Under the pieces are notes generated by a model. The model did no database searches, was not told where the DNA came from, and was given only the letters and a program-made list of their open reading frames with translations. 64,000 nt of DNA, taken from positions 62,001 to 126,000 of IMG/VR virus record IMGVR_UViG_3300033143_001962; one strand, written 5' to 3'. The translations under genes and the position numbers were made by a program. Positions 719-15,397 of this stretch are shown here, piece by piece (position 1 is the first letter of the stretch; every line of letters starts with the position of its first letter).

Positions 719-2078
719 ATTTTTAACAGATGCAGAAAACATGAAGGAAAAGTTGGATACAGTATCTCCTTCATTTTGTTTAGCAAAGTGGAAGCAAGTA
801 TCCTTGCACTTAACAAATGGCATGAATAACTCTTGCTACCATCCTCCATTGCATAAAATTAATGTAGACGATATAATAAAAGATCCAAGCGCACTACATA
901 ATACAGCAGAAAAAGCTATAGCCAGAAAACAAATGGTGAGCGGCGAGCGACCCTCTGAATGTAGCTACTGTTGGGCAATGGAGGATAACGGTGAGTTAAG
1001 TGACAGGCATTACAGAAGTGGAGAACCATGGGCAGCACAGGACTTTGATACAATAGTCGCAAACCCAGAAGCTTCTGTAACGCCATCGTATGTAGAGGTT
1101 AATTTTAACCACTCATGTAACTTAGCTTGCTCTTATTGCAGCCCACAATTTTCGAGTACGTGGGGGGTTGAAGCAAGAAAGTTCGGAGCTTACCCTACTT
1201 CAACTCCACATAACGATCCTGCTTATTTTGCAGGTAATCGTAAACCAATTCCTAATCGCGAATACAATCCATACGTAGAAGCATTTTGGAAATGGTGGCC
1301 CGAGCTTTACAAAGACTTAGTACATTTCCGCATGACAGGCGGCGAACCATTACAAGATAAAAATACTTACAAAGTCTTTGATTATGTTTTGGAAAATCCA
1401 AAACCTGATTTACATTTGAATGTAACTTCAAACCTGTCTGTAGATCAGAAGCTGTGGGACAAATATTTAGGGTACGTTAAGCAATTAACTACTGGCAAGA
1501 TTGAACACTTCATGCAGTACGTATCAGTAGACACATGGGGTGAACAAGCAGAGTACATACGGCACGGGTTAGACTTTGATTTACTTTGGAAACGAGTAGA
1601 CCAGTACTTGACAGAAGTGCCTGAGTACTGTAGTATTACATTTATAATTACTATGAATAACTTGTCGATATACAGTTTGGATAAGTTAATGGAAGGCATC
1701 TTAGAGTTGCGTAAGAAGCACAGTAAAACATATCAGCGTGTATGGTTTGATACTCCAGTCTTGCGTACACCAGAATGGCAGAGCTTACAAATTCTGCCAG
1801 AGTACTATGCAACTAAGTTGATGGATATAAAAGAATTCATGATAGACAACGCGGAGACAGCTGATGAGCTGTATCATGGATTCAAAGATTATGAAATACA
1901 ACGTATGAGCAGAGACATAGCTTGGATGAGACAAGGAACTGATAACGTGGAACAAAAGAAAGCGGACTTTTATCGCTTCTTTAACGAAGCAGACAAACGT
2001 CACGGCACTAACTTTGAAGAAACATTTCCAGAACTTACACACTGGTACCGCGCAGGAAGATACCTTGCTAACAAGTAA
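708..2078 (+). CDS. Radical SAM protein with N-terminal twitch/SPASM-like domain (RS1)
   Basis: CNLACSYC, MTGGEP; N-terminal FCLAKW..SCYH and CSYCW. Confidence 0.9.
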   Translation: MKSKFLTDAENMKEKLDTVSPSFCLAKWKQVSLHLTNGMNNSCYHPPLHKINVDDIIKDPSALHNTAEKAIARKQMVSGERPSECSYCWAMEDNGELSDRHYRSGEPWAAQDFDTIVANPEASVTPSYVEVNFNHSCNLACSYCSPQFSSTWGVEARKFGAYPTSTPHNDPAYFAGNRKPIPNREYNPYVEAFWKWWPELYKDLVHFRMTGGEPLQDKNTYKVFDYVLENPKPDLHLNVTSNLSVDQKLWDKYLGYVKQLTTGKIEHFMQYVSVDTWGEQAEYIRHGLDFDLLWKRVDQYLTEVPEYCSITFIITMNNLSIYSLDKLMEGILELRKKHSKTYQRVWFDTPVLRTPEWQSLQILPEYYATKLMDIKEFMIDNAETADELYHGFKDYEIQRMSRDIAWMRQGTDNVEQKKADFYRFFNEADKRHGTNFEETFPELTHWYRAGRYLANK

Positions 2079-3243
2079 AAACAAAGATTCATTCTGTCCT
2101 GGCCATTGGGATGATATTCAATTTGCTCCATCGCAGGGATATATGTACGGGTGCTGTAAAGCTAAACCTATCTTACTCTCGGATACTAAGGAGCTAGAAA
2201 AACGCAGGACTGATGCATTAAATGGAATTAAAAATCCAGCATGTAGTTATTGTTGGGATACAGAAGCAAAAGGTAATGACAGTTACCGCCATTCGAAATT
2301 AAGCCGCTGGCATGGGTCATTGGCACCACGCCATGTGACGCTAGTGGTGGGTAATTTATGTAATTTACAATGTACGTATTGTAATGAAAAGGCAAGTTCA
2401 AAATGGCAGACAGACAGAAAACAAAATGGTCAGATTGATATGCAGTTTGATACTAATGTATATTATGGTGGAGCAACTTGCGATAATAAAAATTCGCAAG
2501 TATATATAGACTTTTTTAATAAGCTGGATTCGATTTTCAAGTTAACTGTATCCGGTGGCGAGCCACTAATAGGTACCGATTTGTATGATATTTTATCTGG
2601 TTGTGATTTGACAGGAGTCAGACGTATACACATTGCATCTAATTTAAACTACCCTAATACTAGAACATTGGATAAGTTATTAGAGCTCCAACATACACAC
2701 AGAATAACTATTAATGCTAGTTTAGATACAGTTAATGCACCAATACAAGAATATTTACGCTTTGGTTTTAACTGGGAAACATTTAAAAGTAACTTAGATT
2801 TTTTATTAACAAGCACCACGGTGAATGTATCATTCGGTACACTAGTAACAGCACAGACAGTATTCGGGATAAATGACATGTACGAGTTTGTGTACGAGAT
2901 GAAACATAACTATCCTAATAGGATTAACTGGTTTGTGTCGACTTGCACACAGCCGTTAACACATACGTTCGATGCATTAACTGATACAGAGAAAGCTCGC
3001 GCATTAACAGAGACTTTGAAAGTGCAAGAAAAGATATCCAATGTACAACATTTAGATGCTAAAGAAAACAGAGTGGCAATGGAGTTAATTAATATCAATA
3101 CAGTAATTGCAGCATTACAAAATGCAACATTCAATGAAGAATTACGACAAGATCAACAACATTTCTTTAAGCAGTTTAATGAACGCAATGGGTTAACAAC
3201 TCCAGAAGAATTAAAATTTTTAATAGAAGATGAGATTAAATGA
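2065..3243 (+). CDS. Radical SAM protein with N-terminal twitch/SPASM-like domain (RS2)
   Basis: CNLQCTYC, VSGGEP; N-terminal FCPGHW..GCC and CSYCW. Start uncertain: TTG 2065 after AGGA is preferred to 2014. Confidence 0.85.
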   Translation: MLTSKNKDSFCPGHWDDIQFAPSQGYMYGCCKAKPILLSDTKELEKRRTDALNGIKNPACSYCWDTEAKGNDSYRHSKLSRWHGSLAPRHVTLVVGNLCNLQCTYCNEKASSKWQTDRKQNGQIDMQFDTNVYYGGATCDNKNSQVYIDFFNKLDSIFKLTVSGGEPLIGTDLYDILSGCDLTGVRRIHIASNLNYPNTRTLDKLLELQHTHRITINASLDTVNAPIQEYLRFGFNWETFKSNLDFLLTSTTVNVSFGTLVTAQTVFGINDMYEFVYEMKHNYPNRINWFVSTCTQPLTHTFDALTDTEKARALTETLKVQEKISNVQHLDAKENRVAMELININTVIAALQNATFNEELRQDQQHFFKQFNERNGLTTPEELKFLIEDEIK

Positions 3244-4595
3244 GTTTAAGAAAAGAAGGCAGAGAAACAGACAAAGAAGTACTAGACTATATCAATAGTT
3301 ATAGTAAGTCAATGTGTTTAGCTAAATGGTACAATGCTACTATATGGCTAGGCAGCGGCATGACTACTAGTTGTCATCACCCACCAGCACATAACATTCC
3401 AGTACACGAAGTAAAGTTTAATCCATCGGCATTGCATAACACTCGCGATAAAAAGTTAGATCGTTATATGATGCAAGAAGGAGTACGACCTAAAGGGTGT
3501 GAGTACTGTTGGAAAATAGAAGACATGGGCACTGATGCAATTAGTGATCGTGTGTATAAGTCTGTTATATATAAAGACAGAGACATGGTGTATGCAGCTA
3601 AGTCAGACTCAAAAGATAATATTAATCTTAAAACACTTGAGATTGCATTTGATAGAACGTGCAACCTTGCTTGTTCTTATTGTAACCCTGCATTTAGTTC
3701 GACCTGGGTAAGAGATATTAAACGCAACGGCCCGTACGAGAACTTAATAAGCGATGGTAGAGGACACTTTACACATACACACGATGCCGCGCAAATGTAT
3801 AAGCCGGACGAAGAAAACCCTTACGTAGAAGCATTCTTTAAATGGTGGGAAAGCGACTTGAAACATAGCTTACAAGAGCTACGACTGACCGGTGGCGAGC
3901 CACTAATGTCTCCGTATACATTCAGATTGTTTGATAAATTCATTGAAGACAAACCGGATATGCAGTTTGCTCTTAATAGTAATCTTTGTGTTAAGGATAG
4001 TATCATTACTAAGTTAATTGAAACAACCCATAGTATAGACAACTTTCAATTATACACAAGCTGTGAAGCAGTAGGTGACAAAGCAGAATACATACGCGAT
4101 GGGTTCAACTGGGATCAGTGGATGGGTAATATACATAAAATCTTAACGCTAGGAAAAGTAAACGGCTTCCATATGATGTGTACTGTTAATGCATTATGCT
4201 TAGATTCGTTACCTGGTTTCTTAGATCATATGATGAACTTAAAGAAACAGTACGGTAAAGATTATCCAACGTTTTCATTAAACATTTTACGCTTCCCATC
4301 GTTTCAGAGTCCGTTAGTACTGCCAGATGATTTGCGTACAGAGTTTAAAGATGATTTGCAAGTGTGGTTAGATAAGAATATTGATAGTCCATTGTTACAC
4401 CAAATGGAAATCAATCAAGTTAAGCGTTTAATAGATTACTTAGATGTAGTTAAAACGCCGCATGATGATAGTTTTGACTTGCCTACGTTGCGTCATGACT
4501 TTAAACAGTTTTATACGCAGTACGATGAACGTAGAAACAAATATTTTAATATAACGTTTCCTATAATTTCGGAGTGGTACGATGCCCTTAGTTAG
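3240..4595 (+). CDS. Radical SAM protein with N-terminal twitch/SPASM-like domain (RS3); closest to RS1
   Basis: CNLACSYC, LTGGEP; MCLAKW..SCHH, CEYCW; shares ENPYVEAF(F/W)KWW and GDKAEYIRDG/GEQAEYIRHG with RS1. Confidence 0.9.
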   Translation: MSLRKEGRETDKEVLDYINSYSKSMCLAKWYNATIWLGSGMTTSCHHPPAHNIPVHEVKFNPSALHNTRDKKLDRYMMQEGVRPKGCEYCWKIEDMGTDAISDRVYKSVIYKDRDMVYAAKSDSKDNINLKTLEIAFDRTCNLACSYCNPAFSSTWVRDIKRNGPYENLISDGRGHFTHTHDAAQMYKPDEENPYVEAFFKWWESDLKHSLQELRLTGGEPLMSPYTFRLFDKFIEDKPDMQFALNSNLCVKDSIITKLIETTHSIDNFQLYTSCEAVGDKAEYIRDGFNWDQWMGNIHKILTLGKVNGFHMMCTVNALCLDSLPGFLDHMMNLKKQYGKDYPTFSLNILRFPSFQSPLVLPDDLRTEFKDDLQVWLDKNIDSPLLHQMEINQVKRLIDYLDVVKTPHDDSFDLPTLRHDFKQFYTQYDERRNKYFNITFPIISEWYDALS

Positions 4596-4839
4596 TCCAA
4601 GTGTAACAGTTAGAGAAGTTGCCAGTTCGAATATAGTTGGCATACAACAAAAACGTTTTATTCCATCACTGCGCATAAACAATAAATGGACGTTAATTAT
4701 TTCTGATTATCATTACTGGATGAGCAATGAAGTTGATCTAGAAAATTCAGTAATTGAATTGAATGGTGTAAGGGAAGGAATGACAATAGAATTTGAAACA
4801 AAAGAAGAACGCACATGGTTCTTACTAAGGTGGCAATGA
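4582..4839 (+). CDS. Small protein of the 'F-x-x-x-x-D/E-A-x-x-F-x-L-x-W' family
   Basis: GGAG 7 nt upstream; ends IEFETKEERTWFLLRWQ like the 18.3-20.1 kb paralogs. Confidence 0.65.
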   Translation: MPLVSPSVTVREVASSNIVGIQQKRFIPSLRINNKWTLIISDYHYWMSNEVDLENSVIELNGVREGMTIEFETKEERTWFLLRWQ

Positions 4840-5594
4840 TGAGTACTCAAAGATACGAAACCAGGATTAGCCAGTTGATAGTAAGCGGCTGTAGTTTTAC
4901 ACACAACAATCATGATACCCATGTCGCTTGGCCTAATATACTCGAAGCATGGTCCGACATGCAACTAACAAATTTAGCTGTACCTGGTGCCGGCAATACA
5001 CATATAGCTAATAGTATTATCTTGCACTTAGAAAAGAATAAGCCTAATCCATCGGATACATTAGTAATGGTTATGTGGACCGGACCTGAACGTATTGATT
5101 GGATAACAGATAAAGAGAGTTCGAAATTTAAAGATGCCTATCCATTTACATACGATTACGATGATAACAATGAATTAGTACTTGGAGGCGCATGGTGGGG
5201 AAACAAGCCCAGGTCCGACGTTGAAAATTTAATCATTCAGTACTCGAAATATCAGAGCGACTCTAGTTTAGCATTAACCAGTTGGCTCGCTATGCAAAGC
5301 CTAACGAATTATCTCGAACAAAACGGATACGATTACATATATACTTCTATTGCAGACTTAGACGGTGCTGAAGATGCTAATAGGTGGATACAGTACACTA
5401 ACGAATTATCGGAAATTGGGCTATCTGTGGATAATCCACATTGGATACAACCATTCCTGTACGAACACGGAAAAACAAATAATGTATTAATGGACGATAA
5501 CTTTCATGTGCATTGGCAAGGTCACGAATCGTGGGTAACGGATGTGCTAGTGCCAAGATTACAACAGGCAGGGGTTATAACAAATGAGCTATGA
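4836..5594 (+). CDS. SGNH/GDSL-hydrolase-like protein
   Basis: SGCSFT block I, LAVPGAGN block II, C-terminal DNFH (DxxH). ATGA overlap places the start at 4836. Confidence 0.6.
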   Translation: MMSTQRYETRISQLIVSGCSFTHNNHDTHVAWPNILEAWSDMQLTNLAVPGAGNTHIANSIILHLEKNKPNPSDTLVMVMWTGPERIDWITDKESSKFKDAYPFTYDYDDNNELVLGGAWWGNKPRSDVENLIIQYSKYQSDSSLALTSWLAMQSLTNYLEQNGYDYIYTSIADLDGAEDANRWIQYTNELSEIGLSVDNPHWIQPFLYEHGKTNNVLMDDNFHVHWQGHESWVTDVLVPRLQQAGVITNEL

Positions 5595-6864
5595 TTATAA
5601 CAGTTGGGAACCTGTAAAAATATCCGCAGATGAATTAGACCAGTACGAAACTGAATTGCTACGTGATAGTAAAACATTTTGTATCTATCCGTGGATACAT
5701 TTACACGCATATCCTACAGGCGAAACGTATCCTTGTTGCCACGCTGACATGCAATTACCGGTTGGCAATGCAAGAGTCAATACGCTTAAAGACATGTGGA
5801 ATAGCGAAGGCATGAAACAAATTCGTCATAATATGATCGAAGGTGTTAAGTGCGGCGAGTGCGTAGGATGTTATGAACAAGAAGCAAGTGGGTTCTTTAG
5901 TGGACGGAAGAGTGCTAATAAGCATCACGGTCACCACATAGACTTAGTAGAAGAAACACATGCAGACGGGCATTTAGATAAGTTTAGTATGTCGTACTGG
6001 GATATAAGGTTTAGTAATTTGTGTAATCTTAGTTGTAGAAGCTGTGGACACATTTTTAGTAGTAGTTGGTATAAGGATCAAGTAAAGTTAGCCGGTCCCG
6101 ATTGGGGTGCAAACAATAGCGCATTGCAAATAGCAGGCCGCGGTAAAACAGACATGGTTGATCAACTTATGCAGCATATTGATAGTGTGGAACAAATATA
6201 TTTCGCAGGCGGTGAGCCACTTATGATGGAAGAACATTATAAGATTTTAGACGAATTAGAAAAAAGAGAAATGTTCCATGTCCGCTTAATTTACAATACT
6301 AATTTTACACAAATTAAACTTAAAGATAGAGAAGTCTTTGACTACTGGAAAAAGTTCGACTCAGTGAGTGTAGGCGCAAGCTTAGACGCAATGGGGCAAC
6401 GTGCAGAGTACATACGCAAAGGTACTGACTGGGCTGTAGTAGAAGCTAATCGTCGTAAGATGATAGAAGTATGTCCTAACGTAGACTTCTATATTAGTGC
6501 AACATTAAGCATTATGAATGCATTGCACATCGCAGACTTTCATAGGGCTTGGGTAGCTAAAGGATTAATTAACCCACAAGACTTTAACATTAACATATTG
6601 CAGGATCCGATGCATTACCGTATTGACATTGCTCAAGCAAAGTACAAAGACAAAATACGTACTAAGTTCCGCGAACACTTACTATGGCTAAAAGGTAAAG
6701 ATGACTTGAACAGAGCAAGCACAGGTTTTGAAAGTGCTATACAATTTATGGATGCAACAGATAACACAGATCAGATTACGTGGTTCTGGACACACATAAG
6801 ACAACTTGATCTGTTACGCAACGAAGACTGGCATGACTTTATTCCGGAGTTACAAGACTTATAA
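5584..6864 (+). CDS. Radical SAM protein with N-terminal twitch/SPASM-like domain (RS4)
   Basis: CNLSCRSC, FAGGEP; FCIYPW..PCCH, CVGCY. Confidence 0.9.
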   Translation: MSYDYNSWEPVKISADELDQYETELLRDSKTFCIYPWIHLHAYPTGETYPCCHADMQLPVGNARVNTLKDMWNSEGMKQIRHNMIEGVKCGECVGCYEQEASGFFSGRKSANKHHGHHIDLVEETHADGHLDKFSMSYWDIRFSNLCNLSCRSCGHIFSSSWYKDQVKLAGPDWGANNSALQIAGRGKTDMVDQLMQHIDSVEQIYFAGGEPLMMEEHYKILDELEKREMFHVRLIYNTNFTQIKLKDREVFDYWKKFDSVSVGASLDAMGQRAEYIRKGTDWAVVEANRRKMIEVCPNVDFYISATLSIMNALHIADFHRAWVAKGLINPQDFNINILQDPMHYRIDIAQAKYKDKIRTKFREHLLWLKGKDDLNRASTGFESAIQFMDATDNTDQITWFWTHIRQLDLLRNEDWHDFIPELQDL

Positions 6865-7094
6865 TGAGCAGATTTGAATTCAGACCGTTTACGCCAATGG
6901 ACACGTTCCAACCTGGGTTTACGCATTTAGTAAAAGTGTTCAACTGGCTTGATGCCAACGACATTAGTTACATAACCAGAGAGCAAATAGATAAAACAAA
7001 TTTCGAACCGTATACACAAATAGCAATGTCTAGTAGAAGTGCTACGCTATTTGCATTAAAGTGGAGTAATTTAATTAATGTCTTTGCCAAATAA
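6864..7094 (+). CDS. Small hypothetical protein, likely the same '..LFALKW' family
   Basis: Fills the gap between RS4 and RS5 with overlaps; ends SATLFALKWS. Confidence 0.55.
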   Translation: MSRFEFRPFTPMDTFQPGFTHLVKVFNWLDANDISYITREQIDKTNFEPYTQIAMSSRSATLFALKWSNLINVFAK

Positions 7095-8265
7095 AACATT
7101 TTGTGTCCTACCGTGGATTAGTTTAGAAACAAGTCCTATCGGCACCGTGCGACCGTGTTGTCTTGCAGATGATGAGATTACAGATGACAGTGGCAGGAAG
7201 TTTAACTTAAACGATGATAGTTTAATAACAATACAGAACAGTACGTACATGGAGAAGCTACGTCAACAGTTCTTAGACGGTAAGATGCCAGAAACATGCC
7301 GCAAGTGCTGGGACGAAGAAAAAGTTGGCCGTACAAGTAAGCGTATGAATACACAAGTACGCTTAGAGCCCTTAATTAAAGATATAAAAGAATGGGGTCA
7401 GTCGGCAAATGATTTACAGTTCTTAGATTTAAAGCTAGGTAACATTTGTAATCTTAAGTGCAGAATATGTGGTAGTTGGAGCAGTAGTACATTCGCAGCA
7501 GAAGAAATAAAGTGTTCGGAAAATAAAGAATTTCATCGTAACATGAATAAGATGGGTGCATGGCCTAGGACTGCTACATCGTTTTGGAGTGAGTTAGATT
7601 TCTTATCTGGCGACATACGTTACCTTGAATTTACAGGTGGTGAGCCATTTATGATACGTGAGCATTTTGAATTCTTACAACGTTTAGCAGATAAGAACTT
7701 AGCAAGCAGAATAGAAATACATTACAATACAAACGGCACACAGTATCCAAAAGAGTTCTTAGATGTATGGAAACATTTTAAGCATGTTGAAATAGCATTC
7801 AGTATAGACAACGTAGGTAAACGTTTTGAGTACGAGCGCACAGGCGCAAAATGGGATATGGTTAACTACAATATTAAAAAGTTCATTAAGCTGCGCGAAG
7901 AGAATTTGAACATATCGTTACAGCTTTGTTGTACTATTAACATCTATAATGTGTTATACTTAGAAGATATATTCAACTGGGAACACTTCCAAGACTTTAA
8001 TTATGTACATTGGAATATGTTACATGATGCACCTCAGAATTGCATTAAGTCGTTACCAGAAAATGCTAAAGATGCAGTGCATGATGAATTGTTAATGGCA
8101 GATGTCGATGACAAAACATTAGATGAATTTAGAAACATTGTCGACTTTATGTACAGTGGTAAAGGAGTGTCCGACATCCTTAATGATATTGTTAAGTTAG
8201 ACATAAGACGCAATTGTACATTAGAAGACACACATAAGGAACTATTTGACTTATTATATGGATAG
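7078..8265 (+). CDS. Radical SAM protein with N-terminal twitch/SPASM-like domain (RS5)
   Basis: CNLKCRIC, FTGGEP; FCVLPW..PCCL, CRKCW. Confidence 0.9.
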   Translation: MSLPNKTFCVLPWISLETSPIGTVRPCCLADDEITDDSGRKFNLNDDSLITIQNSTYMEKLRQQFLDGKMPETCRKCWDEEKVGRTSKRMNTQVRLEPLIKDIKEWGQSANDLQFLDLKLGNICNLKCRICGSWSSSTFAAEEIKCSENKEFHRNMNKMGAWPRTATSFWSELDFLSGDIRYLEFTGGEPFMIREHFEFLQRLADKNLASRIEIHYNTNGTQYPKEFLDVWKHFKHVEIAFSIDNVGKRFEYERTGAKWDMVNYNIKKFIKLREENLNISLQLCCTINIYNVLYLEDIFNWEHFQDFNYVHWNMLHDAPQNCIKSLPENAKDAVHDELLMADVDDKTLDEFRNIVDFMYSGKGVSDILNDIVKLDIRRNCTLEDTHKELFDLLYG

Positions 8266-9319
8266 AATTAAATTAGTACAGCTGGCAGATTCGTTGACAT
8301 ATCTATCAACGATGGACTTACTAGATGACAGTTTTTTCTCAATTGAGAATTATGTTGAGACAAAAACGTACGACAGCCAAACGGTATTTATTATTAACGC
8401 TTTCGCGCTACACAATAACAACGAAACCGCTATCCGAATACTGGATGCTGGATTTAAGTTAATAGTTGATAGTGTCTGGGAGTCTTATAACAATGCCGGT
8501 GTTGCATTATGGCGTAAGTACGGCAACCAGGTCCTAGTGTCGTACTGTGGCACAAAGTCGATATACGACGATTGCACTAATGTACATTTAGTTCCTAGCT
8601 ACTTTTGGATTCGCGAATTTTTGTTTAGTAAAAAAAATAAGCTAGACAGGTATGTACCGTCGCGCATTAATACCAAAAAATTCCTAATGCCAATGAATAA
8701 AATGAAGCCAGACCGCCGCATAATTTACAACACATTAAAAGATGATGACGCAATAATTAGTCGTCACGAAGATGGGATTTCGTTGCCAATGGACGATACT
8801 GGTGCTAATCTTATATTTACTAGTACAACCGACTTTGATAGAGAATTTAATTCAAATTGGTACGATCAAACGTATTTTTCAGTTGTTACCGAGACTAACC
8901 AAACCGTACTCCCCGAAGAGTTAAAAGGAGTGATTCCACCCGGCGACACTACAGAGACGATGAAGAGGTGGTATGGCGGCAGTAGTATTTTTATAACAGA
9001 AAAAACATTTAAACCGATTATGTTTTCTCATCCATTTATAGTTATGGGCCAATCAGGCACACTGGCAAGGTTATCCGAGTTAGGGTTTATTACGTTCAGA
9101 CATATATTTGACGAGTCGTACGATAAAGAGTTCGGAGCACGTAATCGGTTAACAATGATAAAGAATGACATTGAAAACTTTGATGTTATGTTATATGACC
9201 ATCCGCTTACTGCAGAAATACTCGCATATAATCGCAATCACTTTTACAATGAAGAAATTGTAAACAAAATGTTACAAGATGAAATAATAGAACCATTAAT
9301 GGAGTTTGCAAATGCATGA
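8258..9319 (+). CDS. Glycosyltransferase-like protein (GT10/fucosyltransferase-like C-terminal motif)
   Basis: YFSVVTETN...FITEKTFKPIMFSHPFIVMG...GFITF...DESYD resembles the GT10 Y-F-x-x-x-EN..YITEK...P-x-x-x-G motif. Confidence 0.5.
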   Translation: MDRIKLVQLADSLTYLSTMDLLDDSFFSIENYVETKTYDSQTVFIINAFALHNNNETAIRILDAGFKLIVDSVWESYNNAGVALWRKYGNQVLVSYCGTKSIYDDCTNVHLVPSYFWIREFLFSKKNKLDRYVPSRINTKKFLMPMNKMKPDRRIIYNTLKDDDAIISRHEDGISLPMDDTGANLIFTSTTDFDREFNSNWYDQTYFSVVTETNQTVLPEELKGVIPPGDTTETMKRWYGGSSIFITEKTFKPIMFSHPFIVMGQSGTLARLSELGFITFRHIFDESYDKEFGARNRLTMIKNDIENFDVMLYDHPLTAEILAYNRNHFYNEEIVNKMLQDEIIEPLMEFANA

Positions 9320-9641
9320 ACTAACTGACAACCAACAAGAAGTATGGGATAGATTAAAACACACTGGAATTGACTCTGAAATCGCAGCTAGTCTACAACG
9401 CCGCCTACAATTTTTTACTGGCATGTCGAATAATGCAGCAACTCAGATTGAGGTAGAGCAAAGTCTGTGCGAATCACTAAATCATTATCTCGATAATCGA
9501 GAAATTTATGATTATACAGTCGTGTGCGACGCAGGTAACAACACCGTCCATGACGTTACTACTAATAGGTTAAATGTTGATGTATTTATTAAGCCTACTA
9601 GAGCAGCAGATATCATAAACATAAACTTGACGATAAAATAA
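9312..9641 (+). CDS. Stand-alone contractile tail sheath C-terminal-domain-like protein
   Basis: IYDYTVVCDAGNNTVHDVTTNRLNVDVFIKPTRAADIININL matches the T4 gp18-type C-terminal pattern (Y-x-Y-R-VVCD-x-x-NNT...F-I-x-P-x-R...I-x-L-N-F). GGAG 7 nt before ATG 9312. Confidence 0.65.
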   Translation: MHELTDNQQEVWDRLKHTGIDSEIAASLQRRLQFFTGMSNNAATQIEVEQSLCESLNHYLDNREIYDYTVVCDAGNNTVHDVTTNRLNVDVFIKPTRAADIININLTIK

Positions 9642-10966
9642 TGAATAAATTTTGTCTAGCACCATTCTTCCATACTTATATGTCACCACAGACAGAACGC
9701 CGCATGTGTTGTGCATCACGCGAACCAGCGCAGAACTTTAAACAGTACATAGATACTGATGAAGGAACAGGCGAGTACAATCCACTTACACTAGCAGAAC
9801 ACTGGAACAGTCCGCACATGATGTCAGTACGTAAACGTATGCTCGCAGGTGAAGAACTTCCAGAATGCGAAGTATGCAACGATAAGCTTTTAAATACAGA
9901 CGTCTATCGCAGCTACTTCCAGCACTTGTTTGAACATAAACGACAAGAAGCTATTGCTAAGACAGATGCAGACGGGTTTACAACATGTAATACAGTAAGT
10001 TGGGACTACAGATTTAGTAACTTGTGCAACTTCAAATGCCGTATGTGCGGAGACATGTTAAGCTCAGCGTGGGAAACTGAAGAACGCAATAACGATATGA
10101 TTAACTTCAATGATCCTAAAAACAATTGGATGCAACCTGAAGTTAGACAAAAAATTAGCAAGTTCCACGACTGGCAAGTACAAGAAGAATTCAGCGATGC
10201 AATCGAAGCACACTGCATGGAAGAGATATACTGGGTAGGTGGCGAACCTCTTATGATGGAAGAACACTGGCGCTTTATGTCACGCATAATTGAGCTAGGT
10301 GACGGTCCAGGACTGTACGCTCGATATAACACTAACTTATCCAGACTTAAGTACAAAGGTCTAGACTTGCGTACAATGTTGCCTAAGATACGTGACTGGC
10401 AAATTTGTGCAAGCATTGACGGAACAGGCGAAATTGGTGAGTACATACGTACTGGATTGGATTGGCCAATGTTCTTATCTAACTACCAAGAGATGCAGAC
10501 GATAGCAACGCACCCTAGACAAATGCGCTTAGACTTTACCCTTACACTACCTGGGTTATTCGAACTGAAAAATATGTTCAACTTAAGTAAAGACTTAAAT
10601 ACAATGATGCTTGCTAAAGTTACATTTGCATTCAGCCCAGACATTTTAATGTCACCGTTAGCATTGCCTAAACACATTTTACATAGAATTGTAAATGAGT
10701 TTTTAGACTATGCTGATAAAGAAGGCTACAATAACAATCAACAACCCCTAATAGATGTCTTGAAGAATCTACTTAGCAGACAAACCTTTAGAGAAGAGTG
10801 GGCTCCTGATTATATTGCAGGTGCAACAAAAGGCAAAGCACGAATATTAAAGCTTGAAGCAATTAGACCTGCTTCACTTACATTTGAAGACATACTTAGA
10901 AAGGATGATGAAGCACATGAGTGGTACACAGCCATTAGACACGATGGTAATAACATTACAGAATAG
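9641..10966 (+). CDS. Radical SAM protein with N-terminal twitch/SPASM-like domain (RS6)
   Basis: CNFKCRMC, WVGGEP; FCLAPF..MCCA, CEVCN. Confidence 0.9.
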   Translation: MNKFCLAPFFHTYMSPQTERRMCCASREPAQNFKQYIDTDEGTGEYNPLTLAEHWNSPHMMSVRKRMLAGEELPECEVCNDKLLNTDVYRSYFQHLFEHKRQEAIAKTDADGFTTCNTVSWDYRFSNLCNFKCRMCGDMLSSAWETEERNNDMINFNDPKNNWMQPEVRQKISKFHDWQVQEEFSDAIEAHCMEEIYWVGGEPLMMEEHWRFMSRIIELGDGPGLYARYNTNLSRLKYKGLDLRTMLPKIRDWQICASIDGTGEIGEYIRTGLDWPMFLSNYQEMQTIATHPRQMRLDFTLTLPGLFELKNMFNLSKDLNTMMLAKVTFAFSPDILMSPLALPKHILHRIVNEFLDYADKEGYNNNQQPLIDVLKNLLSRQTFREEWAPDYIAGATKGKARILKLEAIRPASLTFEDILRKDDEAHEWYTAIRHDGNNITE

Positions 10967-12002
10967 AGACACTGGTGATTTACTTCCAGTTTACATTGAT
11001 GTATTTAACGATGCATTAAGTACAAAGTGGTACGGCGCACTTAACGATATACTAGCAAAAGAATTACACTTAGAAAAGAACTATCAGTTCTTTGGTATTC
11101 CGCAGTACGAACGTAATGGTGATTACATCACTGATCAAATAAACGATTCAATACATGCAATAAATGATGCTAACTTAGGTTATCACATACACGATTGTTT
11201 TAGTATGGCAAACACTATACAGGACATCGATGGCGAAATAGGCGATAACCTCCCTGGTCGTAAACTAATACATCAACGTATGAATGATTTGCATAGATAT
11301 TTTGAAGACTTGCAGGGTACGTCCGGAAATATGTCTCCTTTTTATAATAAAGCAGATAAGTACACTCGCTGGCACATTAGGCAATTGAACTTGCTATGTC
11401 ACGAGTACGAAAGTTGGGTACTTAGTTACCGCAAACAAGAGTACGCTAAGGAATGGATGCGTCCGAGTCAGTTAATGTGCTTTTTAAATGCTCCACGCTT
11501 TGAATTGACAGCAGAAGATTACGAAAGTTTCGGTATCGAAACAATAGCTCGACCCTTAGGTGGTGTTTTTGTAGGTGTTAACAAAGCAGTAGGAAAACAT
11601 CACTGGGAAGTATTCCAAGATGAAGGCGGACGTAGCATAGATGAATTAACTACTTCAACATTGCGTTCACAGACAGAAGCAGCAGGAGACTTTGATATAG
11701 AATGGGCAAACAATCCAGGTGAATACGAGTTTATGAAAAAAGAATTAGCTGATTTTAAACAGTGGCTAATAAACAACAACTTTGATCCAGCCGATAAATC
11801 ACTAACAATTGGTCATCCACAAGTTGCTCAAGTTAACCTAAACCGTAGCTTTGGCACTGACGATTATGCTATAATATGGAAGCAGCTATTTAATCATTTA
11901 GATGTGTTCTCAATTGAAACCGAGGACAATAGAGTTGAGTTCGAATACAATTGGGATGATCTGGATTACAGAGAACAGCAAGTAGAGGCACTTAGTAAAT
12001 GA
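10944..12002 (+). CDS. Hypothetical protein, paralog of 29682..30527
   Basis: Shared LH(R/N)(Y/I)FE, LNL-x-x-H-x-x-E and G-x-V-(F/Y)...VGK motifs. Start moved to ATG 10944. Confidence 0.75.
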   Translation: MVITLQNRDTGDLLPVYIDVFNDALSTKWYGALNDILAKELHLEKNYQFFGIPQYERNGDYITDQINDSIHAINDANLGYHIHDCFSMANTIQDIDGEIGDNLPGRKLIHQRMNDLHRYFEDLQGTSGNMSPFYNKADKYTRWHIRQLNLLCHEYESWVLSYRKQEYAKEWMRPSQLMCFLNAPRFELTAEDYESFGIETIARPLGGVFVGVNKAVGKHHWEVFQDEGGRSIDELTTSTLRSQTEAAGDFDIEWANNPGEYEFMKKELADFKQWLINNNFDPADKSLTIGHPQVAQVNLNRSFGTDDYAIIWKQLFNHLDVFSIETEDNRVEFEYNWDDLDYREQQVEALSK

Positions 12003-12100
12003 AATGGCTTAAAAAGATGTGGAACAAAATTAAATTAGAACGACGTTATCGCAAAAAGCTTAAAGAGCTTAAGAAACGCGATCCGTTTATCTATAAATGA
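11999..12100 (+). CDS. 33-aa highly basic peptide MKWLKKMWNKIKLERRYRKKLKELKKRDPFIYK
   Basis: Translated by hand; ATGA overlaps at both ends. Below the ORF-track cut-off. Confidence 0.75.
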   Translation: MKWLKKMWNKIKLERRYRKKLKELKKRDPFIYK

Positions 12101-12276
12101 CACACGCACAAGAAACAAACCCGTGCGTTGGCTGCATGATTATCGATGAATGTACTGGTTACTGTACTGGTTGCTTTCGATCAGAATCTGAAATAGGATC
12201 TTGGGATAGCTTTACTGACATTACCCGCAATTCAATATTAAGTGTACTAGGAGTACGAAGAAGAGACAATGGCTAA
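12097..12276 (+). CDS. DUF1289-like Cys-rich small protein (59 aa)
   Basis: MTHAQETNPCVGCMIIDECTGYCTGCFRSESEIGSWDSFTDITRNSIL fits the PC-x-G...C-x-GC-x-R-x-x-x-EI-x-x-W pattern; overlaps both neighbours. Confidence 0.7.
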   Translation: MTHAQETNPCVGCMIIDECTGYCTGCFRSESEIGSWDSFTDITRNSILSVLGVRRRDNG

Positions 12277-13777
12277 TATATTAGGAATAAGTGCAGGCTT
12301 CCACGACGCAGGTCTGGCAGTAGTTGATAGTGAAACAGGACTAATTAAATTTGCAGGACACAGCGAACGCTTCAGTAAGAAGAAGCATGACGCTAAAATA
12401 TGTCCTGAGATACTTGAGTACGCAAAAGGGCTAGGCCCAATTAGTACTATAGCGTACTACGAGAATCACTTGAAGAAGAATTTACGTATGTGGCGCGCAG
12501 GACAGAAGATAGAAAACTTTAACTGGACTCTGAAGAGTGAACTTAAACAACACTTGCCTGACAATGAAGTACTTCTTGAAGGTGCAAACCTTAAAAGCTA
12601 CGACCACCACAAGTCACATGCCGCAGCAGGATTTCAAACAAGCCCGTACGATGCAGCGACAGTAGTGGTAATAGATGCTATAGGTGAGTTTGATACTATT
12701 AGTATTTGGAATGCAAAGTACGATAAGAATGGCTTTGCAAAGTACAAGAAGGTATGGAGTCAAGGATATCCTCATAGCATTGGATTATTTTACAGTGCAG
12801 TAACAGGCAGCGTAGGCTTACGTCCAATGGACGAGGAATACATTTTAATGGGCATGGCTGCATACGGTAGCCCGCGCCAAAGTATTAAAAAGATACGTAG
12901 AGAATTAATCACATCAGTAAAGCCACCTAAGTTTAAAGAAAACTTGCACATAGGTATAGAACAAGATTCGTTAGAAGACTCACGCATAGACAAGTACGAT
13001 GTAGCAGCAGGCGCACAATTCCTAGTAGAAGAAATGATTGAAGGTATCATGGAAAAGTCTAAGCAGTACGATAACACAGGCAACTTAGTGTACATGGGTG
13101 GAGTGGCATTAAATTGTAGTGCTAATAAGTACCTCGGACAGTACTACGATAATATTTGGATTATGCCTAACCCAGGCGATGCAGGCAGTAGCTTAGGCGC
13201 AGCCGCATTAGCTTACGGTAAGAAAGTATTGTTCGGTGATGCATTCTTAGGGTATAATATTATAAGTGATGGCTATCCCGTAGACGCAATAATTAAAGAA
13301 TTACTTAGCACTAAAATTGCAGGTGTTGCTAACGGTAAAGCAGAGTTCGGACCACGCGCACTAGGTAATAGAAGCTTACTTGCAGACCCTAGAGGTAATG
13401 ATATTAAAGATAAAGTAAACGAAATTAAACAACGTCAAAAGTTCCGCCCGTTTGCGCCTGTGATATTAGAGGAACATGTGCATGACTACTTTGTAATGCC
13501 GGACGGATTCGAAACAAGTCCGTACATGCAAGTCACCGCTAAGTGCAAAGCACCTAAAGAGTTCCCTGCTATTGTACACCACGATGGTACAAGTAGAGTT
13601 CAAACTGTTCCTAAAGACAGAACAGGTATTAGAAAGCTATTGGAAAAGTGGTACGAGGAAACAGGATGTCCTATGTTACTTAATACTTCGTTGAATGTTA
13701 GGGGCGAACCTATAGTAAACGATGTGCATGACGCACATAGATTTGAACAGCATTACGGAGTAAAGGTATTTTCTTAA
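12269..13777 (+). CDS. O-carbamoyltransferase (NodU/CmcH/TobZ family)
   Basis: Kae1-like N-domain (FHDAG, HHKSHAAAG, VIDAIGE) and YrdC-like C-domain (EFGPRALGNRSLLADPR, FRPFAP, HHDGTSRVQTV, LLNTSLNVRGEP). Confidence 0.95.
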   Translation: MANILGISAGFHDAGLAVVDSETGLIKFAGHSERFSKKKHDAKICPEILEYAKGLGPISTIAYYENHLKKNLRMWRAGQKIENFNWTLKSELKQHLPDNEVLLEGANLKSYDHHKSHAAAGFQTSPYDAATVVVIDAIGEFDTISIWNAKYDKNGFAKYKKVWSQGYPHSIGLFYSAVTGSVGLRPMDEEYILMGMAAYGSPRQSIKKIRRELITSVKPPKFKENLHIGIEQDSLEDSRIDKYDVAAGAQFLVEEMIEGIMEKSKQYDNTGNLVYMGGVALNCSANKYLGQYYDNIWIMPNPGDAGSSLGAAALAYGKKVLFGDAFLGYNIISDGYPVDAIIKELLSTKIAGVANGKAEFGPRALGNRSLLADPRGNDIKDKVNEIKQRQKFRPFAPVILEEHVHDYFVMPDGFETSPYMQVTAKCKAPKEFPAIVHHDGTSRVQTVPKDRTGIRKLLEKWYEETGCPMLLNTSLNVRGEPIVNDVHDAHRFEQHYGVKVFS

Positions 13778-15397
13778 ATGTTCGATATATTTACATTGAC
13801 ATCTTATCCGGGTGCTACTAAGGTAAATAGCATCAATGAAGCGCAAGAACTCACAAAGACTAGGTACTGCTGGATACTTGATGATCGCAATGATTACAGT
13901 AACTTTGATTTCCTATGGGAGCCGGCACCCTGGGAGGCTAATCAGTCGCACGTCTGGCCTAGCCAACATCAAGAGAACGGCGGTACTAGATTAGTACCTA
14001 AGCAAAAGTACACAGATACAAATTACCACACTGAAGAAATACCCAGAACACGCTTTCCTAAAATTGTACACTTAGATCACGGCAATGGCTTTGACCCATG
14101 GCTCGCACCTACAACCGGAATGTACTTGCTAGAACGATCACGTTTTATTAACGACTACTTAGGTACATTGAAACGTGTAGTACAGAAGAATATTGATTGT
14201 GGTCACTTATGGGTGATAAGCTCAGTTTGTAGTTATAGAGATTTTGACTTTACGTGGCATCCTAGTGAATGGCAACAAGATATGTTGCATGTGTTTCCTA
14301 GTAATGAACAAAAGTTTGGTGACACATTCTTAATTAACGTAGAAGACTTTTTAAAACAAAGCAAAGCCTTAGAACTGCTCGAATGGTACGACACTATTTG
14401 TTTCCAAGATACTATTGTACACCGCGCAACTCCATCTATGTACTTACATCAACACGATAATCAAGTTGACGCAATGAAGTCAGCTATTTTTCAGAAGATA
14501 GAAGACCCAAGTGAATTCAACGATCCTGTTACATTGTTTACAACTTCAATTGAAGGGTTCGACGACGGAACTATTCCTACAATTAACTTATGGCGCCCCG
14601 AGACAAGAGCTATTACTCCGTTAGACAAAGGTGCCAAGCGTGTACTTGTGCCGAGAGAAGCATTAACTGAAGTACATGATCAGTTATACGATTACAAGTA
14701 CATAGATAAAAGTCATAATGACGATTACAAGTCTTCCCCAATTGATATTGTGTTTATGAGTAACGGCGAATCATGTGCGCAAGAGAACTACGATCGATTA
14801 TGCGAAGTTGCTGACGGTTACGAGATACACTGGGTTAAAGATGTTGAAGGGCGTATTGCGTCAGCACGTGAAGCAGCCAGAGTTTCAAACACTGATTGGT
14901 TCTTTTCTGTCAATGCTAAACTTAAAGTAGATAGAGACTTTGATTGGGACTGGCAACCCGATTGTATGCAAGCCGCAAAGCATTATATATTTTATGCATA
15001 TAATCCATTAACTGATGATACGTACGGACACATGGCAACTATAGCCTGGAATAAGAATTTAGTTAACACTGATACTGACTGGGGCTTAGACTTTACAATG
15101 AGTCACGAGCACGAAGTTATTCCTGTACTCTCGGGAGAAGCTATATACGCAGACGAACCTTGGGCAGCATGGAGAACAGCATTCCGTGAAGTTATAAAGT
15201 TACAGTTAGATGATGGTATGGAATCGTCTTTGCACTTAAAGAAGTGGCTCGCTGCGAATGATGAATGGACAGCTAAAGGTGCTAATGATGCAGTTGATTT
15301 CTTTAAGACTTCAAACGGTGATATGGATAAGTTGTTGTTAAGCTTTGACTGGGAATGGTTAGCTAAGTACTATTATATTAAATATATAACGTACTAG
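13778..15397 (+). CDS. Glycosyltransferase-like (GT-A) protein with three internal repeats
   Basis: DIVFMSNGE..AQENY, WRTAFREVIKL; repeated FDF-x-W-x-P...HV(W/F)PS unit. Confidence 0.55.
   Translation: MFDIFTLTSYPGATKVNSINEAQELTKTRYCWILDDRNDYSNFDFLWEPAPWEANQSHVWPSQHQENGGTRLVPKQKYTDTNYHTEEIPRTRFPKIVHLDHGNGFDPWLAPTTGMYLLERSRFINDYLGTLKRVVQKNIDCGHLWVISSVCSYRDFDFTWHPSEWQQDMLHVFPSNEQKFGDTFLINVEDFLKQSKALELLEWYDTICFQDTIVHRATPSMYLHQHDNQVDAMKSAIFQKIEDPSEFNDPVTLFTTSIEGFDDGTIPTINLWRPETRAITPLDKGAKRVLVPREALTEVHDQLYDYKYIDKSHNDDYKSSPIDIVFMSNGESCAQENYDRLCEVADGYEIHWVKDVEGRIASAREAARVSNTDWFFSVNAKLKVDRDFDWDWQPDCMQAAKHYIFYAYNPLTDDTYGHMATIAWNKNLVNTDTDWGLDFTMSHEHEVIPVLSGEAIYADEPWAAWRTAFREVIKLQLDDGMESSLHLKKWLAANDEWTAKGANDAVDFFKTSNGDMDKLLLSFDWEWLAKYYYIKYITY

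What the first reader, a model, noticed from the sequence alone, without database searches (positions are those of the whole stretch)
9312..9641. Lone tail-sheath C-terminal domain inside the enzyme operon
A 109-aa ORF with a good SD matches the last domain of contractile sheath proteins (VVCD..NNT...FIKP.R...I.I.L) with nothing else attached. It sits between a GT and RS6. In T4-type sheaths this domain forms the tube-proximal inter-subunit 'handshake'. Inference: a sheath cap or assembly modulator, a decoy, or an adaptor that brings the modifying enzymes to the tail. The last would point to the virion as substrate.
Basis: partly seen in the sequence, partly recalled or inferred. Interest (0 to 1): 0.6.

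Follow-up and report, generated by a model that had tools for sequence, protein, structure and literature searches.

The report
Free-standing tail-sheath platform domain gene
An uncultured jumbo phage carries an intact, selected 109-residue gene that encodes only the inner "handshake platform" domain of a contractile tail sheath; it belongs to a widespread, unstudied group of small phage accessory proteins whose target is still unknown.

Summary
Window 9312-9641 (+) is an intact 109-aa ORF with a GGAG 7 nt upstream. It overlaps both neighbours' ends. It matches the tail-sheath C-terminal domain (PHROG 1e-11; Pfam PF17482 6.9e-5, just under the cut-off; AF2 model pLDDT 84.7, Z about 10 to sheath C-terminal domains).

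It is not a decaying fragment. Three other phages of the same uncultured jumbo-phage clade carry intact 102-112-aa versions at 30-36% identity. One of them is syntenic, with flanking enzymes at 80-83% identity. dN is about four times that of the flanks but well below dS.

It is accessory. Together with the preceding 353-aa gene it is inserted between two radical-SAM genes that abut in most of 80 related contigs. Five near-complete relatives and four cultured relatives have only the 880-1130-aa sheath.

It ends 5-15 residues (mostly 10-15) before full-length sheaths do and has no N-terminal arm, so it keeps the platform and lacks the donor strands. The closest free-standing structural analogues are gp25/TssE and IraD.

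More small homologues (some with Tat-like signals) lie in non-structural regions of other phage contigs. I favour a soluble arm-binding platform that modulates or blocks sheath polymerisation. An enzyme-to-tail adaptor is poorly supported. The function is untested.

The parts
9301..9304 (+). Shine-Dalgarno-like GGAG, 7 nt upstream of the ATG
   Evidence: Read directly from the sequence.
9312..9641 (+). CDS of the 109-aa free-standing sheath C-terminal (platform) domain protein (P0001; my g81)
   Evidence: ORF. PF17482 6.9e-5. PHROG tail sheath 1e-11. AF2 with MSA gives pLDDT 84.7. Z 8-11 to sheath C-terminal domains.
9327..9494 (+). Two long helices (residues 6-35 and 42-61). Residues 1-20 are modelled with low confidence and include the W12 conserved among the four clade members.
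   Evidence: Secondary structure of model m2143c9e2d6e3. Alignment of P0001, P0002, P0014 and P0059.
9519..9545 (+). VVCDAGNNT motif (residues 70-78), with C72, N76 and N77 invariant in lone and full-length homologues
   Evidence: Alignments A2 and A3. The same motif is found in T4 gp18.
9570..9635 (+). Terminal beta-hairpin (strands 87-94 and 102-108). The protein stops here, whereas full-length sheaths continue for 5-15 more residues (10-15 in 30 of 33).
   Evidence: Model. Tail lengths of 33 full-length homologues. G001 sheath C-terminus.
8258..9319 (+). Upstream 353-aa gene (g80), co-inserted with the lone domain and of unknown function ('GT' not verified)
   Evidence: No Pfam or PHROG hit. 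Only a weak GT10 lead. A 42-46% identical homologue precedes P0002 in L101.
9641..10966 (+).
   Evidence: Pfam Radical_SAM 0.002 and SPASM 0.016; phrog_14086 1.6e-6. At least 596 relatives in IMG/VR.
7078..8265 (+). Radical-SAM gene g79. In most relatives its orthologue abuts the g82 orthologue, so 8258-9640 is a lineage-specific insertion.
   Evidence: Synteny map of 15 long loci and counts over 80 loci.

Best explanation
Window 9312-9641 is a functional accessory gene of an uncultured T4-core jumbo phage (Rak2 / PA5oct / Vibrio 2.275.O-like).

What it encodes (shown): only the C-terminal inner domain of a contractile tail sheath. In assembled sheaths, and in the homologous initiator gp25, this domain is the platform on which the N- and C-terminal strands ('arms') of two subunits of the next ring dock by beta-sheet augmentation. 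The protein has no N-terminal arm and stops right after the platform hairpin, so by homology it could accept arms but cannot donate them.

Proposed mechanism (inferred, not shown): it acts in the infected cell as a soluble, non-propagating platform that binds the free arms of sheath subunits, and so modulates or blocks sheath polymerisation.

Likely target (inferred): the gene is sporadic, evolves fast and lies in non-structural neighbourhoods. For these reasons I lean towards interference with a foreign contractile system (a co-infecting myophage, a prophage tailocin or a T6SS) rather than an obligatory role in the phage's own tail.
For: Identity as a sheath C-terminal domain.

Platform role of this domain and of gp25: the XM1 paper and the P1 paper.

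Loss of the donor strands: 30 of 33 full-length homologues extend 10-15 residues past P0001's end, and the other three by 5-8. The related G001 sheath continues NTGEISSGQVATSTTV. The lone proteins stop at profile position 108-110.

A real, selected gene:
- SD and overlapping start/stop with both neighbours.
- An identical copy in a sister sample.
- Intact 102-112-aa counterparts in three other clade members at 30-36% identity.
- Against the syntenic L101 copy, dN is 0.54 while flank dS is 1.0-1.5 and its own dS is over 3.
- My own estimate from the genome's base composition (38.6% GC): a random 109-codon frame stays open with probability about 6e-4.

Accessory and fast-evolving:
- Absent from 80 related loci, five near-complete relatives and four isolates.
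- Flanking enzymes are 80-83% identical where the lone protein is 35%.
- Terminal branches are 1.1-2.6 against about 0.02-0.6 for sheath C-terminal domains.

Other lone members lie among host-takeover or anti-defence-type genes. The phage already has a bona fide gp25 (PF04965, 29.3 bits).
Against: No binding was shown. The phage's own sheath is not on the 250-kb contig (72% complete), so the natural partner could not be examined.

In assembled-sheath structures the structural alignment covers model residues 1-99 only. The last strand (102-108) may therefore correspond to the start of the C-terminal linker rather than to a fixed platform strand, and the 'acceptor only' reading rests on homology.

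The gene sits in a co-directional block that begins with baseplate genes. This would fit expression alongside the phage's own tail genes and a role in self-assembly.

Three of the four clade copies are embedded in or next to the radical-SAM operon, which may not be coincidental.
Confidence: 0.35

Rival explanations
1. Exapted binding module with a non-tail target. Like E. coli IraD (a gp25-fold anti-adaptor that binds RssB), the lone domain keeps the fold but binds a host or phage regulatory or defence protein. One version of this is a non-activating mimic that blocks a host sensor of tail proteins.
For: IraD is among the closest free-standing structural matches (6od1_B: Z 7.9, rmsd 2.5 A over 87 residues) and is a documented gp25-fold regulator (PMC6546054). 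Lone family members lie in non-structural regions beside Apyc1, RNA ligase, methyltransferases, Zeta-toxin/Fic-like genes and denV-like genes. A whole subfamily carries Tat-like signals, which cannot serve cytoplasmic tail assembly. Evolution is fast.
Against: The residues invariant in full-length sheaths (C72, N76, N77, N40) are also invariant in the lone proteins, which suggests retained ancestral constraints. No partner is identified. Z below 8 may reflect only a common arrangement (note).
Confidence: 0.28
2. Component or assembly factor of the phage's own tail: an extra initiator-, terminator- or collar-like subunit, or a chaperone that holds the arms of sheath monomers until they reach the tube.
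For: The fold equals that of gp25/TssE initiators (5iv5_BD: Z 8.9, rmsd 2.5 A; 9f4b_AA: 8.6; 6gj1_D: 7.8). The gene lies in a 48-kb co-directional block that starts with the gp5/gp25/gp6-like baseplate genes. No promoter or terminator signal separates it.
Against: Complete relatives and isolates of the clade build tails without it. A canonical gp25 is present. The rate of change is far higher than for structural sheath domains. Other members are not in tail modules.
Confidence: 0.17
3. Adaptor or peptide-recognition element for the neighbouring radical-SAM enzymes. It would present a strand-like substrate, for example a virion protein arm, to the enzymes by beta-augmentation, as RRE/PqqD domains do.
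For: Three of the four clade copies are inside or beside the same radical-SAM operon and are directly followed by a radical-SAM gene with overlapping stop/start: g82 in the window, its 83% orthologue in L101, and a g79-like gene in L102.
Against: The operon is conserved without it in 80 of 80 related loci and in five near-complete genomes. The copy occupies different junctions (g79/g82, g77/g79, after thyA), like other variable small ORFs. No Pfam RRE/PqqD signal at E<=1. Members outside the clade have no radical-SAM neighbours.
Confidence: 0.1
4. Non-functional remnant of a duplicated or recombined sheath 3' end that merely remains open.
For: Pfam score is under the gathering cut-off. The gene has a very high substitution rate, a sporadic distribution, and no expression data.
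Against: The whole domain is covered (6-103 of 104), not an arbitrary piece. The reading frame is intact in four divergent phages and in at least six further in-contig homologues. dN is far below dS. Core residues are conserved. It is tightly coupled to both neighbours. The fold prediction is confident.
Confidence: 0.05

Closest known systems
C-terminal domain of contractile tail sheath proteins (T4 gp18 residues ~540-645; Pfam PF17482 Phage_sheath_1C)
   Same: Sequence homology over the whole domain, including the VVCDxxNNT motif. Same fold: KP1 sheath Z 9.9, PVC/AFP/AlgoCIS sheaths Z 9-11.
   Different: No N-terminal arm, no outer or subtilisin-like domains (no PF04984 hit) and no C-terminal arm. 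109 aa against 880-1130 aa in the clade. Encoded in an enzyme operon. Evolves several-fold faster.
gp25 / TssE sheath polymerisation initiators (Pfam PF04965 GPW_gp25)
   Same: Free-standing protein of about 110-135 aa with the same fold (5iv5_BD: Z 8.9, rmsd 2.5 A over 93 residues; 9f4b_AA: 8.6; 6gj1_D: 7.8; 2ia7: 7.6). Described as a platform that holds the arms of the first sheath ring.
   Different: No PF04965 hit. Profile comparison with the phage's own gp25 is insignificant (probability 2.7%). No EPRI motif is visible in the sequence. Not in the baseplate module. The genome already has a gp25.
IraD, the E. coli anti-adaptor of RssB (gp25 fold)
   Same: A stand-alone domain of this fold, used outside any tail as a protein-binding regulator. 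Structural match Z 7.9, rmsd 2.5 A.
   Different: No detectable sequence relation. IraD is a bacterial stress regulator. No evidence here for any host target.
Tail terminator / sheath cap proteins (T4 gp15, P1 gp24, Afp16)
   Same: Proteins that end sheath growth by taking part in the same four-stranded augmentation.
   Different: Unrelated fold and sequence. Terminators donate strands or bind the last ring on the tube, whereas the lone domain by homology offers the acceptor platform.

Membership tests
Pfam PF17482 Phage_sheath_1C (sheath C-terminal domain) | HMM score at or above the gathering cut-off (26.9 bits) | tested here: not met
   P0001 scores 23.3 bits, E 6.9e-5. Its clade counterparts P0014 (49.5) and P0059 (35.2) pass, as do lone homologues from other contigs (P0030, P0037, P0079); P0002 (21.1) does not.
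Pfam PF17482 Phage_sheath_1C (sheath C-terminal domain) | Homology over the full domain by independent profiles, plus the same fold | tested here: met
   phrog_10581 at 9e-12 and phrog_23 at 1e-11. 384 hits in the representative library. Foldseek and VIA-align top hits are sheath C-terminal domains, Z up to 10.9.
Contractile tail sheath protein (functional sheath subunit) | N-terminal arm, outer domains (PF04984) and C-terminal arm, allowing polymerisation | tested here: not met
   109 aa, with no PF04984 signal. Ends 5-15 residues (10-15 in 30 of 33) before full-length sheaths do.
gp25/TssE sheath initiator (PF04965) | PF04965 profile match and conserved EPRI-type motif | tested here: not met
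   No PF04965 hit at E<=1. hhalign against the genome's gp25 gives probability 2.7%. The motif is not seen in the sequence (the motif is defined).
gp25/TssE sheath initiator (PF04965) | gp25 fold as a free-standing protein | tested here: met
   5iv5_BD: Z 8.9, rmsd 2.5 A, 93 residues. 5iw9_B: Z 8.1. 6gj1_D: Z 7.8.
gp25/TssE sheath initiator (PF04965) | Encoded in the baseplate module and present in all members of the clade | tested here: not met
   It lies in the radical-SAM operon. It is absent from 80 related loci, five near-complete relatives and four isolates. The true gp25 is g54.
RiPP recognition element (PqqD-like RRE) | PqqD/RRE profile match and constant pairing with a radical-SAM enzyme | tested here: not met
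   No such Pfam hit at E<=1. Pairing is seen in 3 of the 10 verified lone genes only.
Binding of sheath arms by beta-augmentation (functional property, not a family) | Physical complex with N- and C-terminal sheath strands | not testable with these tools
   The phage's own sheath is not on the contig. The one complex job gave no verdict and is not evidence either way.

The most novel reading that the evidence does not exclude
Free-standing sheath-platform domains may be a widespread class of small phage 'tail-mimic' weapons or shields. The cytoplasmic forms (as here) would poison the sheath assembly of rival contractile machines (co-infecting myophages, tailocins, T6SS), or would blind a host immune sensor that recognises tail proteins. 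The Tat-signal forms would do something analogous in the periplasm.
Probability: 0.15. Interest if true: 0.8.

Novelty: new variant of a known kind. Interest (0 to 1): 0.5.

Why it matters
The handshake platform is the universal joint of contractile injection systems: phage tails, tailocins, eCIS and T6SS. A natural, soluble, arm-less copy of it would be a simple dominant-negative or chaperone tool for those machines.

If aimed at competitors or at host sensors, it would also be a new kind of inter-phage or anti-defence factor. The Atlas shows at least 18 clusters of 50 or more members of 108-148-aa viral proteins with this domain (some may be fragments), so the question concerns a sizeable, unstudied protein group and not a single ORF.

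If instead it is only a redundant assembly helper, the finding is a modest annotation gain.

Tried and rejected
- **Complex prediction.** P0001 with the first 35 and last 40 residues of a related phage's sheath (G001): no verdict, score 0.02, controls not run. This is not evidence for or against binding.
- **Expression data.** No public run was listed for window 8200-11000.
- **T4 late promoter TATAAATA.** 5 matches in the window against 7.7 expected, none near the gene.
- **Sigma-70 and terminator scans.** Fewer than or equal to chance.
- **megablast** of 8000-11000 against phages: no match.
- **Word-index protein searches.** With P0001 and with the 14-sequence alignment they returned only query members.
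- **Back-translated pattern scan** of IMG/VR with P0001: nothing.
- **Single-sequence AF2:** too poor to use (pLDDT 59.5).
- **Second weak PF17482 signal** at G000:C1:137261-137383 (E 0.056), inside a phrog_11311 protein: treated as noise.
- **Search for the phage's own full-length sheath** with PF04984, phrog_23, phrog_10581, tblastn of the 2.275.O tail module, and a family HMM: not on the contig.
- **Phylogeny to find the donor sheath lineage.** Unresolved. The lone proteins sit on long branches outside the full-length clades with weak support (SH-aLRT 84-91), and long-branch attraction is likely. By BLAST, P0014 and P0059 are 41-47% identical to the clade's own sheath domain and P0001 is 30-35%, so an origin from the clade's sheath is plausible but not shown.
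- **g80 / lone-gene linkage.** A g80-family gene lies within about 1.5 kb in 3 of 4 clade copies, against 23 of 80 loci in general. This is not significant (about 0.08 by my binomial estimate).
- **Genetic code and sequence handling.** No alternative genetic code was used.
Full report
**1. The observation**

Window 9312-9641 (+) is an ATG-to-TAA ORF of 109 codons. GGAG lies 7 nt upstream. The ATG overlaps the stop of the preceding 353-aa gene (ATGCATGA), and the TAA overlaps the ATG of the following radical-SAM gene (TAATG).

The product (P0001) matches the sheath C-terminal domain by several routes:
- Pfam Phage_sheath_1C over profile positions 6-103 of 104, at E 6.9e-5. The 23.3 bits are below the 26.9-bit gathering score.
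- Two PHROG tail-sheath families at about 1e-11, matching only their last ~80-100 positions.
- tblastn finds 513 phage records. Every listed place is the 3' end of a sheath-sized gene, at 40% identity or less.
- phmmer aligns residues 28-106 to T4 gp18 residues 564-642 of 659.

The downstream neighbour is indeed a radical-SAM/SPASM-type paralogue. The 'GT' label of the upstream gene is not supported by any family hit; there is only a sub-threshold Atlas lead to GT10.

**2. The genome**

The window is bases 62001-126000 of a 249,797-bp IMG/VR contig judged 72% complete.

It has a T4-type core:
- major capsid, portal and prohead protease;
- the gp46/47-like nuclease and the gp55-like late sigma factor;
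- gp5-, gp25- and gp6-like baseplate proteins.

Its capsid protein is 63-68% identical to those of Vibrio phage 2.275.O, Sinorhizobium phage Phosso, Pseudomonas phage PA5oct and Erwinia phage pEa_SNUABM_19. It is therefore an uncultured jumbo myophage.

No full-length sheath is on the contig. PF04984, phrog_23, phrog_10581 and a family HMM find only the 109-aa ORF. The whole tail module of 2.275.O (head completion protein, sheath, tube and others) has no counterpart. The real sheath is therefore most likely in the missing 28%.

The lone gene lies in a 48-kb co-directional block that starts with baseplate genes and a 4342-aa ORF. The block continues into an enzyme operon with:
- six radical-SAM paralogues carrying an N-terminal SPASM-like Cys box;
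- a hexapeptide acyltransferase;
- a DUF1289 protein;
- a carbamoyltransferase.

**3. It is an insertion and an accessory gene**

The downstream radical-SAM protein has at least 596 relatives in IMG/VR. In the best 80 loci (59-64% identity) the operon order g72-g74-g77-g79-g82-carbamoyltransferase is conserved. In most of them the g79 orthologue ends within a few tens of bases of the g82 orthologue. None of these loci encodes a relative of P0001, by tblastn at E<=10 or by a family HMM on six-frame translations. Window 8258-9640 (g80 plus the lone gene) is thus a lineage-specific insertion.

Relatives carry only the full-length sheath:
- Five near-complete relatives (342-374 kb, 95-100% complete) each have exactly one match to the family profile, in an open frame of 1080-1130 codons.
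- The isolates 2.275.O, PA5oct, Phosso and pEa_SNUABM_19 likewise have only the full-length sheath.

Base composition of the insertion equals that of its neighbours.

**4. It is not debris**

An exhaustive phmmer search of 1.84 billion cluster representatives gave 384 hits at E<=1e-3. Of the best 150, 51 are 200 aa or shorter. Some of these are contig-end fragments of sheath genes. They keep the C-terminal tail and nest within full-length clades on short branches. Others are complete small genes inside contigs.

Three of the complete small genes come from the same phage clade:
- **P0002** (102 aa, contig L101) is syntenic. The order is g80-like (42-46% identity), P0002 (35%), g82 orthologue (83%), carbamoyltransferase (80%), g85-like (64%), thyA-like (78%).
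- **P0014** (112 aa, L102) lies between the g77 and g79 orthologues of the same operon.
- **P0059** (112 aa, L103) follows a thyA-like gene, with a g80/g314-family gene 1.2 kb downstream.

All four are 30-36% identical to each other. They share W12 and the invariant C72, N76 and N77.

Selection, for P0001 against P0002 (Nei-Gojobori estimates):
- dN is 0.54 and dS is above 3, which is saturated.
- The flanking enzymes give dN 0.13-0.15 and dS 1.0-1.5.
- Even with the flank dS as denominator, the ratio is about 0.4-0.5. This indicates relaxed but real purifying selection.
- From the genome's base composition (38.6% GC), I estimate that a random 109-codon frame stays open with probability about 6e-4. 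Yet the frame is open in all four phages.

A 4.8-kb contig from a sister sample carries the identical gene, with one SNP in 1.6 kb outside it.

**5. What the protein is structurally**

With a 47-sequence alignment, AlphaFold2 gives pLDDT 84.7 and pTM 0.72. The elements are helices 6-35 and 42-61, strand 67-71, a short helix 79-83, and a hairpin 87-94/102-108.

Foldseek's best PDB hits are T4 gp18, Klebsiella phage KP1 sheath, R-type pyocin and diffocin-type sheaths, and PVC, AFP and AlgoCIS sheaths.

VIA-align scores:

| Match | Z | rmsd |
|---|---|---|
| C-terminal parts of the sheaths above | 8-10.9 | 3.1-5.9 A |
| T4 gp25 (5iv5_BD), 93 residues | 8.9 | 2.5 A |
| KP1 gp25-like (9f4b_AA) | 8.6 | 2.4 A |
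| TssE (6gj1_D) | 7.8 | 3.1 A |
| Geobacter gp25-like (2ia7) | 7.6 | 4.7 A |
| E. coli IraD (6od1_B) | 7.9 | 2.5 A |

What the literature read here says:
- gp25-type initiators resemble this domain and hold the arms of the first ring (XM1 preprint; P1 tail paper).
- IraD is a gp25-fold protein exapted as an anti-adaptor that binds RssB (PMC6546054).

Compared with 33 full-length homologues, P0001 ends 5-15 residues early (10-15 in 30 of them), and the lone proteins of its type stop at the same profile position. A related sheath continues NTGEISSGQVATSTTV after the aligned end and begins with a typical N-terminal arm, MALVSPGVEVTIID. P0001 has neither.

The inference is that it keeps the acceptor platform and lacks both donor strands.

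One caveat applies. Against assembled sheaths the structural alignment stops at model residue 99. The role of strand 102-108 is therefore uncertain.

**6. The wider family**

Further complete lone genes were verified in contigs unrelated to the radical-SAM operon:

| Protein | Neighbourhood |
|---|---|
| P0007 | Among small ORFs |
| P0028 | Near a denV-like gene |
| P0005 (with an extra C-terminal domain) | After four tandem methyltransferase-like paralogues, near Zeta-toxin/AAA_33, Fic and DnaJ genes |
| P0030 | Between a nucleoside deoxyribosyltransferase-like gene and an anti-Pycsar Apyc1 homologue |
| P0037 | Next to a YAcAr-domain gene |

P0030 and P0037 belong to a subfamily of about a dozen representatives. 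These have an N-terminal MNRRxF(F/L)K motif followed by a hydrophobic stretch, a Tat-like signal.

The ESM Atlas lists at least 18 clusters of 50 or more members of 108-148-aa, mostly viral, proteins carrying PF17482.

In trees the lone proteins have terminal branches of 1.1-2.7 changes per site, against about 0.02-0.6 for sheath domains. They fall outside the full-length clades, but resolution is poor and long-branch artefacts are likely. By BLAST, P0014 and P0059 are 41-47% identical to the clade's own sheath domain. An origin by duplication of the clade's sheath 3' end is plausible but not shown.

**7. How it most likely works**

Shown:
- It is a real, selected, accessory gene.
- It encodes only the sheath platform domain, without arms.
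- It is tightly packed in an operon.
- It evolves fast and is distributed sporadically.
- Relatives sit in non-structural neighbourhoods.

Inferred: the protein binds strand-like partners by beta-augmentation, as its homologues do. The most economical partner is the arm pair of a sheath subunit. A soluble platform without arms would sequester or cap subunits and could not propagate a lattice.

Complete relatives assemble tails without it and a canonical gp25 is present. I therefore favour a modulatory or antagonistic role over an essential structural one, possibly against foreign contractile systems.

Rivals are:
- an IraD-like exaptation to a non-tail target, which would include a role as a defence decoy;
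- a dispensable helper or minor component of the phage's own tail;
- an adaptor for the radical-SAM enzymes;
- a dead remnant.

The adaptor idea has one point in its favour: in three clade members the gene is immediately followed by a radical-SAM gene. Against it are the 80 of 80 operons that lack the gene, the variable junctions it occupies, and the unrelated contexts elsewhere. The remnant idea is largely refuted.

**8. Limits**

- No expression data were available.
- The phage's own sheath is missing from the contig.
- The single complex-prediction job gave no verdict.
- dS is saturated.
- The tree is unresolved.
- Nothing here tests binding.

**9. Verdict**

It is best filed as a new, free-standing variant of the sheath/gp25 platform domain and as a member of an uncharacterised but numerous group of small phage proteins. 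Interest is moderate. Its function could be tested readily with synthetic genes.

Noticed in passing
Proteins P0030, P0037, P0039, P0063, P0064, P0069, P0073, P0104, P0106, P0127, P0140; loci L105:2028-2441 and L107:399-830: A subfamily of lone sheath C-terminal domains carries an N-terminal twin-arginine (Tat)-like signal (MNRRxFxK plus a hydrophobic stretch). In L105 it sits between a deoxyribosyltransferase-like gene and an anti-Pycsar Apyc1 homologue. Export of a sheath-type domain is unexplained.
   Followed up: partly
window 741-15397 (g72-g85) and loci L018-L097: An operon of six paralogous radical-SAM enzymes with an N-terminal SPASM-like Cys box, plus a carbamoyltransferase and a DUF1289 protein. 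It is conserved in at least 596 IMG/VR contigs. Yet the g82 protein has no tblastn hit at 1e-20 in 50,697 isolate phage records. Its substrate is unknown.
   Followed up: partly
G000:C1:39102-52130 (locus L008), upstream of the window: A single 4342-aa ORF directly after the gp6-like baseplate wedge gene and before tail-fibre-like genes. Not analysed.
   Followed up: no
L101:3468-4250: The syntenic relative has a NUMOD3 homing-endonuclease-like gene between the g82b-like gene and the carbamoyltransferase. This gene is absent from the window, which hints at how the variable slots of this operon are remodelled.
   Followed up: no
L114:2931-8576: P0005 (lone sheath domain plus an extra ~60-aa C-terminal domain, shared with P0095) follows four tandem N6_N4 methyltransferase-like paralogues. 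It is near Zeta-toxin/AAA_33, Fic and DnaJ genes. This is a second case of a lone sheath domain beside a tandem array of paralogous enzymes.
   Followed up: partly
window 10854-12002: The ORF after g82 overlaps g82's 3' end by 50-110 nt, depending on the start chosen (the JGI call starts at 10917). It has no family hit and is replaced by an unrelated 359-aa gene in L101.
   Followed up: no
window 8258-9319 and G000:C1:193242-194264: g80 has a distant paralogue (g314) elsewhere in the genome. g80-family genes occur in 23 of 80 related loci at different positions. The family has no Pfam or PHROG annotation, and the Atlas shows only viral 'hypothetical' clusters.
   Followed up: partly
phage isolate collection: tblastn with P0014 and with P0037 gave 15 and 5 more places than records, so a few cultured phages have a second sheath-domain-like place. 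These were not identified. They could be cultivable carriers of a lone domain.
   Followed up: no
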